From positions 186,001 to 250,000 of the IMG/VR virus record IMGVR_UViG_3300024308_000016: DNA of 64,000 nucleotides. One strand, 5' to 3'. The notes beneath the pieces are model-generated. The model did no database searches. It was not told the DNA's origin and worked only from the letters and a program-made list of their open reading frames with translations. Below are positions 50,870 to 57,703 of this stretch, in pieces. The position numbers and the translations under genes are program-made. The first letter of the stretch is position 1. Each line of letters opens with the position of its first letter.

Positions 50870-50925
50870 AGTGCGAACCCTTTCTTTTATTATGCGGACC
50901 AAAAAACACTCAAAGGATCACAGCC

Positions 50926-52946
50926 ATGGCAAAAGACATTGACCCACTGAAGATAGAGCTGCTCATCCCCATGAAGACGGACTTGCAGGGTGTCAAGCCC
51001 GTGCTGGTCATGGACATCATGAGCGGCATGAGCAAGAACTTCCACCCTGAGGGCTTGTTCTCGGTGGAGATCTTCGGTAAAGTCGGAGAAACTACACGCT
51101 CGGCCACCTTCGCCTATATCAACTTGAATATCCCGGTGTTTCACCCGCTGCTGTTCAAGGTGATCTGCGATTTGAAGGAGCTGTACCAAGACATCATGGC
51201 CGGTAAGGCCTACGCAGTGTTCGATGAGGAAAAGAAGGACTTCTTCAAGAGCAACATTGCAGAAGGTGAAACCGGCTTTGCGTTCTTTTTGAAGCACTTC
51301 CCCAAGCTGCAGTTCGAAGAGCGTAAATCCATCACCCGGGCTGAGTACATCCGTCTGGTGGAGATGTACCGCGATAACCCCTTCATCGAGCAACTGGTCA
51401 TCTTGCCCGCCGGTGTGCGGGACTATGTGGTCGAAGAAGACGGCAAGCCTTCGGAAGACGAGATCAACGGTATGTACCGCTCCATCATGGCAGTGGCTGG
51501 CTCCATGGAGAACGTGCGCGCTGATGTGAACCCTGAGTTCATCGATGCGTCCAGATACAACCTGCAAGTCAAGCTGCTGGAGATCTACCGATACCTGATC
51601 GGCCTGATCTTGGGCAAGCACAAGATGGTCCAAGGCGCGTTCTTGAGCCGCAAGGTCTCCAACACCACGCGAAACGTGATCACCTCTTATATCCCGAACG
51701 TGCAAGAGTTCGGCGATGCCAGAAGCGTGCGTGCTGACCAGACGGTGATCGGCCTGTACCAGTTCACCCGAGACATCATGCCGCTGGCGGTGCATGCCAT
51801 TGTGGGCAAGTACCTGCCCAAGGTTTTCACGGGTCCCAATACCCCGGCTCAGCTGGTCAATCCAAAAACCCTGCACAAGGAAATGGTGACCGTCAACCCC
51901 CGGGAGTACAAGAAGTGGATGACCTACGAAGGCATCGAGAAGATGGCCGATCGATTCTCCGAAGAGTCGATGCGCCATTACCCGATCATGATCGAAGGCT
52001 ACTACATGGGCCTCGTGTACAAGGGCAATGACGGCACGTTCAAGTTCATCCAGGACATCGACGAGATCCCGGAGTCCCGCTCCAAAGATAGCGTCACTCC
52101 CATCACCATGGCGGAGTTCCTGTACATGTGCCTGTACGAGGAAGCCCTGGACGCCTGGGGTTATACCACTCGGTATCCTATCTCCGGCTATGGATCGACC
52201 TACCCGGGTGGGGTCGCTCTGAGAACTACCGTGCGATCGGAAGTGCGCACTGAGCTGGACGACTACTGGCAACCGATGCCTCACCAAGCGGTGAGCTTTC
52301 CGTTGCCGGGTGCGCAGTTCTTCAACTCCATGAGCCCAGCTGTCCGCCAAATTGGCCGGCTGGGGGCTGATATAAATACAGCTTTCACTCCCCTAAATCG
52401 CATATACAGCTATCCCAGACGAGGGATGTGAGTGACTAAGGGTGTAAGCGTATATGTCCTTCTGTCTAGTAATAGACAGTCGAAACTTCTTTAATTGCTG
52501 GAAACCCCTGAGAGCCGACCACACCACTGCGAGCGGTAACGTAAAGCGACGGTTTTAAGAAATGGGCGGATTGGGCAATCAGCAGCCAAGCCTCTTACTG
52601 AGAGGAAGGTCCAACGATCATCGGGTAGCTCCGAGTAAAGCCCCAAGCGGGGAAGAAATGGGAAGGGTCCTACCAGGTCATGCTGGGGATCTTGATATGA
52701 TCTGCTCCTCATGGAAACATGAGGCGGGTGTCTGTAGCACACCGGGACTGCGTAGCGAGCAGTCTGGACAATAGGTACGACGGGGACCAATGTTCTCACT
52801 ATTGTGTACTGACCCAGGAAGCCAAGCGAGAAGTCAAGCGTATGCTCGCTAGCAGGGATTATTACATGAACCTGGACGGCACCATGGCGTTCAGCCAAAA
52901 CAACGACTACATCTCTTTGGCGCTCAAGTATCTTACTGCGCGCTGA
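50926..52946 (+). CDS. Virion RNA polymerase beta'-like catalytic subunit (phiKZ gp180-like), spliced: join(50926..52371,52776..52946), 538 aa
   Basis: FHPEGLFSVEIFG, ILPAGVRD and TTRYPI motifs; exon joining restores the RLGAD-YDGD catalytic motif in frame. Confidence 0.9.
52372..52775 (+). ncRNA. Group I self-splicing intron, 404 nt, no homing endonuclease ORF
   Basis: 5' exon ends in U and intron ends in G; P AATTGCTGGAAA, Q AATCAGCAG, R TCCAACGATCA, S TGATATGATC; IGS CGTATATGTC pairs with both exons. Confidence 0.92.
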
Positions 52947-52963
52947 TCTTTGAGGATTTCACA

Positions 52964-55900
52964 ATGGGCTTTCAGCAATACAAGGATTGGTATCGGGATC
53001 ATGGCACACGCAATGCGCTGAGCCTGATGAACGTCGATCCCACGCCGGTCAAGAACCTGCCCCAGGGCTCGACCCTGCACTACCTGGGCTCCGATGATGC
53101 CCCACTGCCTGATCTGTCTGATCCCCTGTTTGCTGGGTACTCTAATAAGATCGAGCTGCACTCCATCACGGAGTACAACGGAGCCACCGAGCCCCACGGC
53201 TCCAAGCTAGCGGTACAGGTGGTCAAACAAACCACGGACTTTGCGTCTCGCAGCAAGCTGTTCCACTACTTGAAGACCCTGAACCTGTCCACAGTCTCCA
53301 ACAGCCAGCTGGTGGTGGTGAGCTACGGCTTCTTGGATTTGATGTACCGCTATCCGGCAGTATCGACTTCCAAGTACTATCAGTTTCGCAACAAACTGCA
53401 GACGTTTGTCTCCACGGTGAACTTCCTGAACCGGGACAAGCCCAGGAACAACTTCATTGTGCTGACGGTGCCATCCGAGCTGGTAGGCCGCAACACGCTG
53501 GACAACCGGGCGCTGGGCCAACCCAAGCAAGTCGCCAGCATCTTTGACACCGAGGAGAAGGTGGTGTTGCGCGAGATGTGGCTGTGGTGTAATCCCGATA
53601 CCCGGGACCATTCGGTCTTCGCTGACATGAGCGAGACTGATATGCGGCACTTGAACTTGATGTTCAAGACTTACACAGGTGAATACACCACGGTCTCGTT
53701 TGGCTATCTGTACAGCTGGATGAAGGGCAACCCCAACTACACCACAGTCTCTGCTGTGATGCAGGTGAGCTTCATCGAGCTGCAAAAGTACTGGCTCAAG
53801 TACTTGATGGTGCTGCAAACTATCAACGCCAATGGTGCATCGCTGGCCGAGCAGGAGAAAGCCGCAGCCGAGGCGATGGTCAAGGCAGAGACCGCCACTG
53901 ATCCCGACAAGGAGGCTCCTGAGGGCGACCAGCCCCAGGAAGAGCGATTTCCCGAAGTACCGACTGAAGGACACTCTGGACTGGGAACAAGTAGCTCAGG
54001 CGACGGGCGTGACACCGCAACAAGCAAGGCTACTGCTGGCGACACTATTGAAGCCGAGATCGATATTACCCAGCAGCTCAAAGAACTCGACGCGGATATA
54101 GCCGCGCTCGATGCACTGGACAAGCGCAAGTTCGACAACAAGTTCGTGGTCAAGAAAGACGCCGATGGTGAAGAGCTCATCGACGTCAAGGACGTGACAC
54201 CGGAAGTATATACCTCCGACATCCCGGAGACTGCTGAAGCCATCGCGGCGAAGATCTTCACCGCCAAGACCGCCAAGCAAGCTCTCCTGGACAAGATCGA
54301 CGCAGCCGCTGATGAAGGCCGCATCTCCGTGTCCGACTACCGCAAGCTCAGCGAGCAAGCCAGGAAGTCCGACCAAGCGCAAGACCCCTTCGGCTCCGAC
54401 AAGACTATTGCCGAGGCTATGAAGATCGAGCCCGGGGAGCTGGAGATCACCCAGCAAGAAGCAGCACTGAATGTGCCGCCCACTGTGCTCGATCCGTCGA
54501 TGGCCGCAGCTCCCCTGTCGGTGATGGATCGCAAGTACAACACCTCTATCATCTACAAGGATGTGCTGAGGTCGGTGCAGGCTATCCAAAAGGCTGGCAT
54601 CATCGTACGTCGCCATGAGGTGGAGACCAAGTACTCGGAAATGGGTACGTTCGATGTGCACACCATCGAGCTCAAACCCGTCAACGGCAACCCCTCCATC
54701 ATCCGGGCACGCATACCGCGCGTCGACGAAGAAGGCATCTTCGTGGTGCGGGGTGTGCGCTACTTGGCGCGTAGCCAGATGGTGGACAAGCCCATCCGCC
54801 GCATCGGTGTCAACCGTGTGGGCCTGACCAGCTACTACGGCAAGAGCTTCGTAGACCGGGCAACCAAGAAAGCCGATAGCTACTTGGAGACCATCATCCG
54901 ACGCCTGAACCGTGGCACCATCGAGCCAGACCAAGACATCCGGGACGTCTCTCCGGGTGATGTGTTCGACAACTACTTCGAAGCGCCCTACATCTACAAC
55001 GGTCTGGCGGCAAAGTTCCGTTCGTTCAGAGCTGGTCCGTACTTGCTGAACATGAACCACAAGGACCGGGAAAAGGCAACGACTCCCGAGATCCTCGCCA
55101 AGCTGGAAGTCAAAGGACGACGCCTGATCGGTCAGGGCCCTGGCTCTCGTCCGCTGGTGGTGGACATGGACAACCAGTTTTACCTGATCGGCCCTGACGG
55201 GGAGACTCCCGTAGGAGACATCTTTGACATCATGAAGATGGACCGCCACAATGCACCTGTGGACTTTGCGGAAGTGAAGGTCTTCTCCAAGGGGATTCCG
55301 GTCGGTGTGTTCATCGGCTACAACCTGGGATTTCGGGCACTGGTCAAGTACCTGGGAGCTCGCCACCGTCTGGTGGAAGGACGCCAGCAAAAGAAGATGG
55401 GACCCTACGAGTACGCCGTGCAGTTCAAGGACGTGGCCTACATCTTTGACCGCAGGGACAAGGCTGCATCATTGGTGCTCGCTGGTTTCCGGGCGTTTGA
55501 GAAGGACACCAAGGCGTACGACGCCGTCGAGTTCGACAACAAGGCCGTCTATACCCGACTGATGGAGTCCCGGGGTCTGACGAGTATCTATCTCAAGGAG
55601 ATGGAGAACTTGGTGGACATGTTCGTTGACCCGATCACCGAGGACTTGCTCAAGGAGCTCAACGAGCCACAGACCTTTATGGGGCTGCTGGTGCGCTCGT
55701 GCGAGTTGCTCGACACCTACCACCATCCGGCGTCCCAGGACATGAACAACCAGCGTGTGCGGGGCTATGAGCGCTTCGCTGGCTTCCTGTACAAGGAGAT
55801 GGCCAACTCGGTAAGGGCATTCAAGTCCAAGAACACGACAGGACGCGCTAAGGTGGACATGAGTCCGTTTGCAGTGTGGTCGCTTGTCACGCGTGACAAC

Positions 55901-57658
55901 TCCGTCAAGCAAGCCGAGGACATCAATCCCATCCAGGCGCTGAAAGGCTCGGAAGCCATCACCTATGTGGGAGAAGGTGGCCGCTCCAAGGAGTCGATGA
56001 ACAAGGCATCCCGCGCTCTGCACACCTCCAACCTGGGCGTGGTGTCGGTCGATGCTTCCGTAGACTCTTCGGACGTGGGTATCAACATCTTTACCTCCGC
56101 CAACCCTGGCTTCAACTCCGTGCGTGGAATGAGCAAGAAGGGTCGTGAGATGGGACCCGCCAACCTCCTGGGCACCAGCGCGATGCTGGCACCCTTTGCG
56201 ATCAATGACGATCAAACAGGTCCGCACTACTGGAGACGGTATTGTGTATCTCCCTCAATTGCGAGAACCCCCTGAGAGCTCCACTACCACTGCTAGCCGC
56301 GAGGCGAAGCGAAGGTTCTAACAAAGCTGGAGATTGGGAAACCCGCAGCCAAGCCTCTCTAGTCAGAGGAAGGTTCAACGACTATGGCAGTTTGTCAGCC
56401 ATAGGGCCGAAGTGGCCCGAAACAGGGAGCATCTCTTAATCTAGAGATGAAGATATAGTCTCGACATCTGGGGAAAACCCAGAGCTGCTCTTATACTAGA
56501 GCGGGGCAAGCGTAACGAACTTGCCTGAAGGTATCGCCAAAACGTGTCGCATTTATCTCCATCCAGCAGGCCCACACCGTGGCCACCACTGGCTACCACG
56601 CACCCGTGGTGCGTACTGGCTACGAGTCCGTGATCGGACAGCGTACTGGTGAGATGTTCGCTTCGGCTGCTCGGATGGACGGCAAGGTGATCTCGGTATC
56701 GGACTCCGGCATCTTGGTGGAGTACGCAGACGGTGAACAAAAGGGCTACACCTTGGGCACGATGTACGGACGTGCGGAAGGCTCCACCTATCCACACAAC
56801 CTCATCACTGAGATGAAGCCCGGTCAGAAGTTCAAGAAAGGCGAGTACATCTCGTACAACACCAACTTCTTTGAACCCGACCCGATCTTGCCAGGCTCCG
56901 TGGTCTACAAGGGTTCCATGCTTACGCGTGTGGCTCTGATCGAATCCTCCAACACCCATGAGGACTCCTCGACTATCAGTGAAGAACTGTCCAAGTCGAT
57001 GACCACCACCACCGCCAAGGTCAAGAAGTACGCCGTGAACTTCCGGCAAAACCTGCTCAACATGGTCAAGATCGGCCAGCAGGTCAACCCTGAAGACATC
57101 ATCATGACCATCGAAGATGAGATCACTGCGATGGACGACAGCTTCGGAGATGCGTCGATGGAGATCCTGGCCGCCCGTGCCAAGAACTCTCCGACGTCCG
57201 GCTACCGTGGCCGAGTCTCTGACATCGATGTGATCTACCACGGCGACAAATCCGATATGTCCGCATCTTTGAAAGCCTTGGCTGATCGCTCCGATCGCCG
57301 AAGAGCCGACAAGGCCAAGGCCACGGGTCGACCTGCTGTGACCGGAGCTGTTGACTCCGACTACTCGCACGACGGTGCACCGCTGATGCTCAACAAAGCG
57401 ATCATCATCGTCTACATCACCGTCTCTGAAGGAGCGGGCGTTGGTGACAAGTTGGTATTCTCCAACCAGCTCAAGAGCGTGATCGGTGAGGTCATGCCCT
57501 ACAAGCTCACCACCAAGTCTGGCCTTCCCGTGCATGCCAAGTTCGGTGCCAAGAGCTTCGCTGCCCGTATCGTGAACTCTATGATCTCGATCGGATTGCG
57601 GGGCGCAGTCCTCGACCGGCTGACTGATGTCGCCGTCGAAGCTTACGAAGGAAAGTAA
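52964..57658 (+). CDS. Virion RNA polymerase beta-like subunit (phiKZ gp178-like), spliced: join(52964..56212,56537..57658), 1456 aa
   Basis: QRVRGYERF, TYVGEGGRS, SVDSSDVG and GVGDKLVFSNQLKSVI motifs; exon joining gives NDD-PKRVAFISIQ. Confidence 0.9.
56213..56536 (+). ncRNA. Group I self-splicing intron, 324 nt, no homing endonuclease ORF
   Basis: P1 GAU|C-AAACA-GGUC with U-G pair; P AATTGCGAGAA, Q AACCCGCAG, R GTTCAACGACTA, S AAGATATAGTCT; terminal G. Confidence 0.94.
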
Positions 57659-57670
57659 GTAAAAGATGTC

Positions 57671-57703
57671 CCAGATCTGGCACCCCAAAAGGGTGCCAGA
57701 TCC
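57671..57703 (+). terminator. Hairpin after the vRNAP operon
   Basis: GATCTGGCACCC-loop-GGGTGCCAGATC. Confidence 0.65.

What the first reader, a model, noticed from the sequence alone, without database searches (positions are those of the whole stretch)
56213..56536. Second, related group I intron in the adjacent vRNAP beta gene; both lack ORFs and both follow a GAT codon
Seen: textbook R (GTTCAACGACTA) and S (AAGATATAGTCT) motifs, a compact P1 with U-G pair, and splicing that fuses the 1103-aa and 359-aa ORFs into a 1456-aa subunit at NDD|PKR, equivalent to bacterial beta HDDANR. The two introns share blocks (CCCCTGAGAGC; GCAGCCAAGCCTCT...AGAGGAAGGT.CAACGA) and both use a GUC guide against exon GAU. 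Neither encodes a nuclease, and none is evident in the window. Inference: one intron lineage colonised two conserved sites of the same enzyme, by reverse splicing or with a lost or trans-acting endonuclease. Both core subunits of the virion transcription machine would then be gated by ribozymes.
Basis: partly seen in the sequence, partly recalled or inferred. Interest (0 to 1): 0.8.

Follow-up and report, generated by a model that had tools for sequence, protein, structure and literature searches.

The report
Self-splicing intron in phage RNA polymerase
A 324-base group I intron with no gene of its own interrupts the virion RNA polymerase beta gene of an uncultured jumbo phage, at the same codon boundary already known as an intron site in phages PhiPA3 and 201phi2-1, so it is real but is a new example of a known thing.

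Summary
Window 56213-56536 is a group I intron (Rfam RF00028, 65.2 bits, E 3e-14). Removing it joins the 1103-aa and 359-aa ORFs into a 1456-aa protein. The two exon ends are exactly adjacent in intron-less homologues such as Ralstonia phage RP12.

The site is not new. An intron after the conserved Asp-Asp (E. coli RpoB D675) is published for PhiPA3, where it carries the HNH homing endonuclease gp210. It is annotated for 201phi2-1 gp273/274. I found it unannotated in EL, HPP-Temi, Serratia 2050HW and several IMG/VR contigs.

The upstream intron (52372-52775) follows the first catalytic Asp of the beta' NADFDGD motif. Both introns have the same IA-type architecture and the same GUC guide against exon GAU. 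They are 79% identical in the P4-P6 domain, but their 3' domains match different relatives, and trees neither support nor reject them as sisters.

No endonuclease gene lies in either intron or in the window. A near-identical phage in another metagenome lacks the beta' intron, and all nine flanking codons differ synonymously. That points to exchange by DNA recombination rather than reverse splicing. No spliced RNA was seen.

Verdict: new member of a known kind, moderate interest.

The parts
50926..52371 (+). vRNAP beta' (N-terminal part, phiKZ gp180-like) exon 1. It ends ..RLGAD with GAT at 52369-52371.
   Evidence: PHROG 2986 at 8e-164 and a weak Pfam Rpb1 domain 1 hit. The spliced 538-aa product aligns as a single HSP to RP12 ORF042.
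52372..52775 (+). Intron 1, a 404-nt ORF-less group I intron after the first Asp of the NADFDGD motif. P1 is GAU|AUA paired with UAUGUC (52453-52458), with a 78-nt P1 loop. The last base is G 52775.
   Evidence: Rfam 58.3 bits. A DNA contig from run X3 skips it exactly. Homologues are colinear across the site. P7 covaries with intron 2: GAUCA/UGAUC against GACUA/UAGUC.
52776..52946 (+). beta' exon 2, which begins YDGDQC (the rest of the catalytic motif).
52964..56212 (+). vRNAP beta (phiKZ gp178-like) exon 1, 1083 codons, ending ..AINDD.
   Evidence: PHROG 3148 at 1.7e-244. tblastn to RP12 and others ends exactly here.
56213..56536 (+). Intron 2 (the finding), a 324-nt ORF-less group I intron.
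   Evidence: Rfam 65.2 bits, exon colinearity, and a covarying structure shared with five introns at the same site.
56210..56222 (+). P1 hairpin. Exon GAU plus intron C pairs with GGUC (guide GUC at 56220-22), and U56212 pairs with G56220 as a wobble at the 5' splice site.
56223..56246 (+). P2, 9 bp, capped by the GNRA tetraloop GAGA.
   Evidence: Local fold. P2 columns 5-29 carry compensatory changes.
56250..56255 (+). P3 5' strand CUCCCU. It pairs with AGGGAG at 56424-56429.
   Evidence: Rfam alignment and direct reading of the sequence.
56259..56374 (+). P4-P6 domain: P4 56260-65/56343-47, P5 56270-72/56336-38, a P5 extension hairpin 56279-56332 with a GCGA loop, and P6/P6a 56348-58/56365-74.
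   Evidence: This domain is 79% identical to intron 1.
56373..56384 (+). R element: J6/7 plus the P7 5' strand GACUA.
   Evidence: P7 is invariant in six introns at this site.
56385..56418 (+). P7.1 (56385-88/56398-401) and P7.2 (56404-08/56414-18), the extra hairpins typical of subgroup IA.
56430..56449 (+). P8 hairpin.
56450..56461 (+). S element: J8/7 plus the P7 3' strand UAGUC.
56467..56536 (+). P9 (with a GAAAA loop), P9.1, P9.2 (loop CGUAACGAA), the tail UGAAGGUAUC and the terminal G 56536.
   Evidence: The motifs are shared with the PhiPA3, 2050HW and HPP-Temi introns.
56537..57658 (+). beta exon 2, 373 codons, beginning PKRVAFISIQQ. Its first 14 codons precede any start codon.

Best explanation
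Window 56213-56536 is an ORF-less group I intron of IA-type architecture in the beta gene of the virion RNA polymerase of an uncultured phiKZ-like jumbo phage (IMG/VR contig 3300024308_000016). It should splice in the standard way. The guide GUC pairs with the exon's GAU codon, forming a U-G wobble at the 5' splice site. An outside guanosine attacks there. The freed exon then attacks after the terminal G at 56536, and the ligated mRNA encodes one 1456-aa beta subunit. The intron belongs to a family that sits at this same Asp-Asp boundary in other jumbo phages. Some members carry an I-HmuI-like HNH homing endonuclease in the P1 loop (PhiPA3 gp210, Serratia 2050HW, IMG/VR L023). Others carry none (201phi2-1, EL, HPP-Temi, this one). 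The neighbouring beta' intron (52372-52775) belongs to the same broad family but has a different 3' domain. The most likely history is two separate acquisitions by DNA-level homing or recombination, followed by loss of the endonuclease gene or dependence on one supplied in trans. A copy-and-paste event within this genome is less likely. Shown here: the ribozyme signature, the exact junction, the family membership, the occupied and empty sites in relatives, and the absence of a nuclease gene. Inferred: that splicing actually occurs, and the route of acquisition.
For: Ribozyme: Rfam scores are above the gathering threshold for both introns. P1, P2, P4-P6, P7.1/7.2, P8 and P9-P9.2 fold locally. 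RNAalifold on six introns from this site predicts 62 pairs, 39 of them with compensatory changes.
Junction: the exon ends are adjacent bases in six intron-less phages. The spliced products align as single HSPs to intact RP12 genes. The 14 codons before the first possible start of the 359-aa ORF are conserved.
[quoted passage not shown] 201phi2-1 gp273/274 is a joined CDS in RefSeq, was identified by mass spectrometry, and has two spliced long reads. I confirmed the identical DD| boundary in PhiPA3, 201phi2-1, EL, HPP-Temi, 2050HW, L023 and L031.
Endonucleases of relatives: NUMOD4 + HNH_3 + NUMOD1 domains.
Kinship: the 3' half of intron 2 is 80% identical to 2050HW and 75% to PhiPA3. The 3' domain of intron 1 matches L023, L031, L034 and a PhiPA3 intron elsewhere in that genome (region of the phiKZ gp71 homologue).
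DNA-level exchange: a contig from run X3 (97-99% identical phage) lacks intron 1 exactly, and all 9 codons around the site differ synonymously.
Against: No spliced RNA was observed. The only contig across a splice site in a run labelled RNA is unspliced (56522-56751), and the tool judged that run to be probably DNA. P1 has only 3 exon base pairs and P10 is minimal. The trees are poorly resolved, so they do not exclude that the two window introns are sisters (p-AU 0.28 and 0.14). Only 64 kb of the 272-kb genome was scanned for endonucleases. The direction of the intron 1 polymorphism, gain or loss, cannot be told.
Confidence: 0.85

Rival explanations
1. One reading: one intron copied itself within this genome from one RNA polymerase gene to the other by reverse splicing into a second GAU site, with no endonuclease involved.
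For: Both introns have the same GUC guide against GAU, the same architecture and 79% identity in P4-P6. The two target sites share little DNA beyond GAT, which argues against one endonuclease recognising both. In related IMG/VR phages, introns at three different GAT sites (beta' AD|, beta' FD|, beta DD|) form one starred clade, 97/98*. The AU test does not reject the two window introns as sisters.
Against: The 79% identity in P4-P6 is no higher than to a Litunavirus intron (79-83%). From P7.1 onward the two differ strongly, and each has closer relatives in other phages. The intron-less beta' allele differs at all nine flanking codons, which reverse splicing would not cause. HNH-bearing relatives exist at the same beta site.
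Confidence: 0.12
2. The ribozyme is dead and the gene is effectively split. Two separate beta polypeptides would be made, as with the naturally split RNA polymerase genes of jumbo phages.
For: No spliced RNA was seen. Jumbo phage RNA polymerase genes are often split (PMC7598289). One study found no splicing at the predicted phiKZ introns under its conditions (PMC10914365).
Against: All core elements are intact and covary with relatives. The 14 conserved codons PKRVAFISIQQAHT have no start codon ahead of them and would be lost. The break falls inside a conserved catalytic-region motif. The same-site intron in 201phi2-1 gives a joined protein seen by mass spectrometry.
Confidence: 0.04
3. The introns are kept because they regulate when or whether the virion polymerase subunits are made (ribozyme gating), or because they protect the site from a competitor's endonuclease.
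For: Both subunits of one enzyme are interrupted. Three other IMG/VR contigs also carry introns in both genes. In PhiPA3 the intron and its endonuclease give a competitive advantage (PMC11620839). An occupied site is immune to cutting.
Against: There is no endonuclease here to act as a weapon. A near-identical phage does without intron 1. About 92% of GenBank relatives have the beta site uninterrupted or joined across only a short insert (265 of 288 records). No data here bear on regulation.
Confidence: 0.1

Closest known systems
PhiPA3 gp210 mobile intron in the vRNAP beta gene gp211/gp209 (Birkholz et al., Science 2024, PMC11620839)
   Same: Same gene and the same boundary (..NDD|). Same guide GUC. 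Shared P9 (UCGACAUCU..), P9.2 loop (UAACGAA) and UGAAG tail. The 3' half is 75% identical.
   Different: The PhiPA3 intron is 1352 nt and carries an HNH nicking endonuclease in its P1 loop. The window intron is 324 nt with a 5-nt P1 loop and no ORF.
201phi2-1 gp273/274 intron and the EL gp186/gp187 intron
   Same: ORF-less group I introns (336 and 415 nt) at the same DD| boundary. 201phi2-1 has protein-level and some RNA-level evidence for splicing.
   Different: 201phi2-1 lacks the P5 extension and EL has larger insertions. The host phages are only 36-42% identical in the flanking protein.
Unannotated same-site introns in Serratia phage 2050HW (Moabitevirus) and Pseudomonas phage HPP-Temi (Pawinskivirus)
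   Same: These give the best blastn matches, about 72% over 240 nt. The boundary is the same. In the tree 2050HW is the nearest row to intron 2.
   Different: 2050HW carries a 328-aa NUMOD4/HNH_3 endonuclease. Both records annotate the exons as separate genes.
Predicted phiKZ introns (endonuclease genes gp56, gp72, gp179; RNAP subunits gp55, gp180) and introns found here in phiKZ-like OMKO1 (near the gp71-74 homologues) and in PhiPA3 (gp71-homologue region)
   Same: Same intron family and the same GUC/GAU rule. The OMKO1 introns interrupt a beta'-like reading frame, one of them directly after NADFDGD.
   Different: Different genes and different codon positions. I did not verify which polymerase these genes belong to, and splicing was not detected in phiKZ long-read data (PMC10914365).
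Classical phage IA2 introns (T4 td/nrdB/sunY, SPO1, Twort)
   Same: Group I introns in essential phage genes at conserved motifs, with P7.1/P7.2, with or without homing endonucleases. This comparison rests on my own knowledge.
   Different: Different genes. No sequence-level comparison was made here, and the subgroup was inferred from architecture, not from a classifier.

Membership tests
Group I intron (Rfam RF00028) | Conserved catalytic core (P3-P8 with the R and S elements) scoring above the curated threshold | tested here: met
   65.2 bits against a gathering score of 50, E 2.9e-14, full model 1-253.
Group I intron (Rfam RF00028) | 5' splice site after a U that forms a U-G wobble with the internal guide in P1 | tested here: met
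   U56212 pairs with G56220. GAUC/GGUC is the predicted local hairpin. The same GUC guide occurs in all relatives examined.
Group I intron (Rfam RF00028) | Terminal G at the 3' splice site, and exact restoration of the reading frame on removal | tested here: met
   G56536. The product is 1456 aa without an internal stop. There is a zero-base gap in six intron-less homologues.
Group I intron (Rfam RF00028) | Helices supported by covariation among homologues | tested here: met
   39 of 62 RNAalifold pairs have compensatory changes in six same-site introns. P7 covaries between the two window introns. P3 could not be scored because it forms a pseudoknot with P7.
Group I intron (Rfam RF00028) | Self-splicing activity, meaning ligated exons in RNA | tested here: inconclusive
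   No spliced joint was found in four public runs. There is one unspliced contig in a run labelled RNA that is probably DNA, and one intron-only contig in a run labelled RNA.
Subgroup IA (IA2-like phage introns) | Extra hairpins P7.1 and P7.2 between P7 and the P3 3' strand | tested here: met
   Two hairpins at 56385-56418. P7.2 covaries. No formal subgroup classifier was available.
Mobile (homing) group I intron | Intron-encoded homing endonuclease | tested here: not met
   The internal ORFs have no Pfam hit. There is no HNH, GIY-YIG or LAGLIDADG family among 50 window ORFs. tblastn with five intron endonucleases found nothing below E 0.1.
Mobile (homing) group I intron | Presence/absence polymorphism at a fixed site, with altered flanking exon sequence | tested here: met
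   For intron 2 the same site is occupied or empty across phages. For intron 1 an exact intron-less allele exists with nine synonymous flank changes. No intron-less allele of intron 2 was seen in a close relative.
vRNAP beta subunit (phiKZ gp178 family) | Homology and gene order matching the virion polymerase locus | tested here: met
   PHROG 3148. tblastn to PhiPA3 gp209 and phiKZ. Same neighbours as in PhiPA3 and HPP-Temi: a large tail-fibre-like gene, then beta', beta, structural genes and the head protease.

The most novel reading that the evidence does not exclude
This is a family of group I introns with a fixed GUC guide that has repeatedly settled on GAU (Asp) codons in the catalytic motifs of jumbo-phage RNA polymerases. 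The sites are beta DD|, beta' NAD|, FD| and GD|, and in relatives include twin introns around a 6-nt micro-exon. In this reading the family moves between sites by reverse splicing, which needs only the 3-nt guide match, and then spreads between phages by recombination. Separation of transcription from translation in nucleus-forming phages could be what lets ORF-less introns accumulate in these genes.
Probability: 0.2. Interest if true: 0.6.

Novelty: new member of a known kind. Interest (0 to 1): 0.35.

Why it matters
In itself this adds one more occupant to a homing site that is already characterised experimentally in PhiPA3. The wider value is comparative. The survey shows that this site and the beta' NADFDGD motif are recurrent intron targets across cultured and uncultured jumbo phages. 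Several GenBank records annotate the exons as separate genes and should be corrected. All these introns share a GUC guide against GAU. Natural populations hold both intron-plus and intron-minus alleles with a recombination signature. This gives a tractable system for asking how ORF-less introns persist and switch sites, and whether intron occupancy protects phages from competitors' homing endonucleases.

Tried and rejected
- Megablast of window 50900-57700 against GenBank phages found nothing. The phage is known only from metagenomes. Its best protein relatives, Ralstonia RP12/RP31 and Burkholderia FLC9, are about 43% identical.
- I first placed the 5' end of intron 1 after the GAT at 52425-52427, guided by the ORF end and the Rfam start. 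The intron-less X3 contig and the homologues move it to 52371|52372.
- A global MAFFT alignment of 33 intron cores gave misleading identities of 56-64%. I replaced it with anchored segment alignments.
- Maximum-likelihood trees of 32 and 16 introns left both window introns without a supported sister. AU tests did not discriminate.
- Laying reads from four runs gave no spliced joint. Most joints in run X6 were chimeric matches to other group I introns.
- I did not build a covariance model, because a model of about 300 positions would exceed the calibration limit. I did not use the count of structure pairs, to avoid typing long structure strings. RNAalifold pair counts were used instead.
- An intein, a frameshift or a simple split gene were considered and rejected, given the ribozyme signature and the exact colinearity.

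Full report
**What is there**

Rfam's group I model matches the window twice above its curated threshold. One match is at 56203-56484 (65.2 bits, E 2.9e-14) and the other at 52436-52724 (58.3 bits). These are the only Rfam hits in the 64 kb.

The flanking ORFs 52964-56275 and 56579-57658 match consecutive parts of one PHROG family, 'RNA polymerase beta subunit', at profile positions 3-1051 and 1065-1422.

**The junction**

Removing 56213-56536 gives a 1456-aa product that reads ..AINDD|PKRVAF.. with no internal stop. In tblastn, the last residue of exon 1 and the first of exon 2 fall on adjacent bases in RP12, RP31, FLC4-3B, FLC1-1B, LucasX and Xoo-sp14.

The exon ends with U56212, which can pair with G56220 of a GUC guide, and the intron ends with G56536. 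A one-base shift would give the same mRNA but would break both rules.

The 14 codons PKRVAFISIQQAHT lie ahead of the first possible start of the 359-aa ORF and are conserved in homologues. They would be lost without splicing.

**Structure**

Local folds give the following elements:
- a 4-bp P1 hairpin
- a GNRA-capped P2
- P4-P6 with a long P5 extension
- P7.1 and P7.2
- P8
- three 3' hairpins, P9, P9.1 and P9.2

P7.1 and P7.2 are the mark of subgroup IA. That assignment rests on architecture and on my own knowledge of the subgroups, not on a classifier. RNAalifold on six introns from the same site predicts 62 pairs, 39 of them with compensatory changes.

**The site is already known**

Birkholz et al. 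[quoted passage not shown] They show that its HNH endonuclease gp210 nicks the intron-less site in PhiPA3 and in phiKZ gp178.

RefSeq annotates 201phi2-1 gp273/274 as a joined CDS that was identified by mass spectrometry. A long-read study saw two spliced reads there.

I confirmed the identical DD| boundary in the phages below.

| Phage or locus | Intron length (nt) | Endonuclease ORF |
|---|---|---|
| PhiPA3 | 1352 | yes (HNH, gp210) |
| 201phi2-1 | 336 | no |
| EL | 415 | no |
| HPP-Temi | 348 | no |
| Serratia 2050HW | 1371 | yes (HNH) |
| IMG/VR L023/L024 | 1363 | yes (HNH) |
| IMG/VR L031 | 577 | not examined |

A junction-spanning RP12 protein segment finds 288 GenBank phage records. In 265 of them one place covers at least 80% of the query. 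Among the rest, the rows shown break at the junction residue. So roughly one record in twelve is interrupted there.

**The neighbouring intron**

A DNA contig from run X3 comes from a 97-99% identical phage in an invertebrate gut metagenome. It jumps from 52349 to 52779 with 25 other bases in between. That is exactly the length of the window's exon sequence on the two sides of 52372-52775, and the contig reads QIGRLGAD|YDGDQC.

Intron 1 is therefore 404 nt and follows the GAT codon of the first Asp of NADFDGD. Homologues agree. Its guide is also GUC (52456-52458), at the end of a 78-nt P1 loop. That loop is where relatives carry their endonuclease genes.

The same beta' boundary is occupied in IMG/VR L042. 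In L034, L035, L038 and L039 two tandem introns flank a 6-nt micro-exon, TTCGAT. Three IMG/VR contigs carry introns in both genes, as the window does.

**Are the two window introns one lineage?**

At family level they are. They share the same architecture, the same guide and 79% identity in P4-P6. That identity is matched or exceeded by a Litunavirus intron in an N4-type polymerase gene (79-83%). Fourteen IMG/VR stretches, from 13 contigs including the window's own, share the P6 block exactly.

From P7.1 onward intron 2 is closest to 2050HW (80%) and PhiPA3 (75%). Its P9, its P9.2 loop and its UGAAG tail are theirs. Intron 1 instead has a P9.1 and a GGACAAUAGG tail of the type seen in L023, L031, L034 and a PhiPA3 intron in the region of the phiKZ gp71 homologue.

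Trees place intron 2 with 2050HW and EL (85/87) and leave intron 1 unplaced. A sister relationship is not rejected (p-AU 0.28 and 0.14). In the IMG/VR relatives, introns at three different GAT sites do form one clade with strong support (97/98*). Cross-site movement therefore happens in this family.

**Mechanism of spread**

No endonuclease gene lies in either intron, among 50 window ORFs scanned against Pfam, or by tblastn with five intron endonucleases. The endonucleases of relatives are I-HmuI-like (NUMOD4, HNH_3, NUMOD1).

The intron-less X3 allele differs from the window at the third position of all nine codons around the site, including GAC in place of GAT. Divergence is about 6% in the 250 nt upstream and 1.2% in the 495 nt downstream. 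This is what gene conversion from a diverged donor leaves behind. The direction, gain or loss, cannot be told. Reverse splicing would not alter the flanks.

X3 also carries intron 2 up to 56481 with three differences, then diverges after 56488. X4 carries intron 2 with the same ends.

**RNA evidence**

None of the four runs shows ligated exons. Run X6 is labelled RNA but is probably DNA, and it has an unspliced contig across the 3' splice site. Run X11 is labelled RNA and has a single 268-nt contig that equals 56220-56487 exactly, with no exon cover. That would fit a stable excised intron, but it is weak evidence.

**Verdict**

The feature is a new member of a known, experimentally studied kind.

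Noticed in passing
L034 3095-3850 (also L035, L038, L039): In related IMG/VR jumbo phages the beta' catalytic motif is split as AD | FD | GD by two tandem group I introns. They flank a 6-nt micro-exon, TTCGAT. Both introns follow GAT and both have a GUC guide.
   Followed up: partly
window 52349-52779: A contig from DNA run X3 (a 97-99% identical phage) lacks intron 1 exactly. It differs at the third position of all nine flanking codons, including GAC instead of GAT at the insertion point.
   Followed up: partly
window 56488-56661: In run X3 intron 2 matches up to 56481, then continues with unlike sequence. The match resumes only at 56662. This suggests a mosaic 3' domain and exon flank in a close relative.
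   Followed up: no
window 56220-56487: Run X11, labelled RNA, holds one 268-nt contig identical to the intron interior and nothing from the exons. This would fit an accumulating excised intron, but DNA carry-over is not excluded.
   Followed up: no
L025 3604-3993 (also L026, L027; L028 has a 1399-nt insert): Some relatives leave the DD| site empty but carry an insert about five codons downstream, after DDPKRV. L025 scores as a group I intron. L028 has no Rfam hit, and its 356-aa ORF gave only a weak HNH_3 match.
   Followed up: partly
L007 3750-4600 (Pseudomonas phage OMKO1, phiKZ-like): Two unannotated group I introns interrupt a beta'-like reading frame, after ..SIDD| and directly after NADFDGD|. 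Both follow GAT.
   Followed up: partly
L005 2952-3960 (Pseudomonas phage phPLST, Litunavirus): An intron of the same family splits an N4-type RNA polymerase subunit gene. Its P4-P6 domain is 79-83% identical to the window introns, and an endonuclease ORF follows the core.
   Followed up: partly
L001 2704-7413, L002 1-5436, L048 1-3619: The GenBank records of HPP-Temi, Serratia 2050HW and EL annotate the two beta exons as separate 'RNA polymerase beta subunit' genes and do not annotate the intron.
   Followed up: yes
window 52375-52452: Intron 1 has a 78-nt P1 loop at the position where relatives carry HNH genes, while intron 2 has a 5-nt loop. The loop may be what remains of a deleted endonuclease gene.
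   Followed up: no
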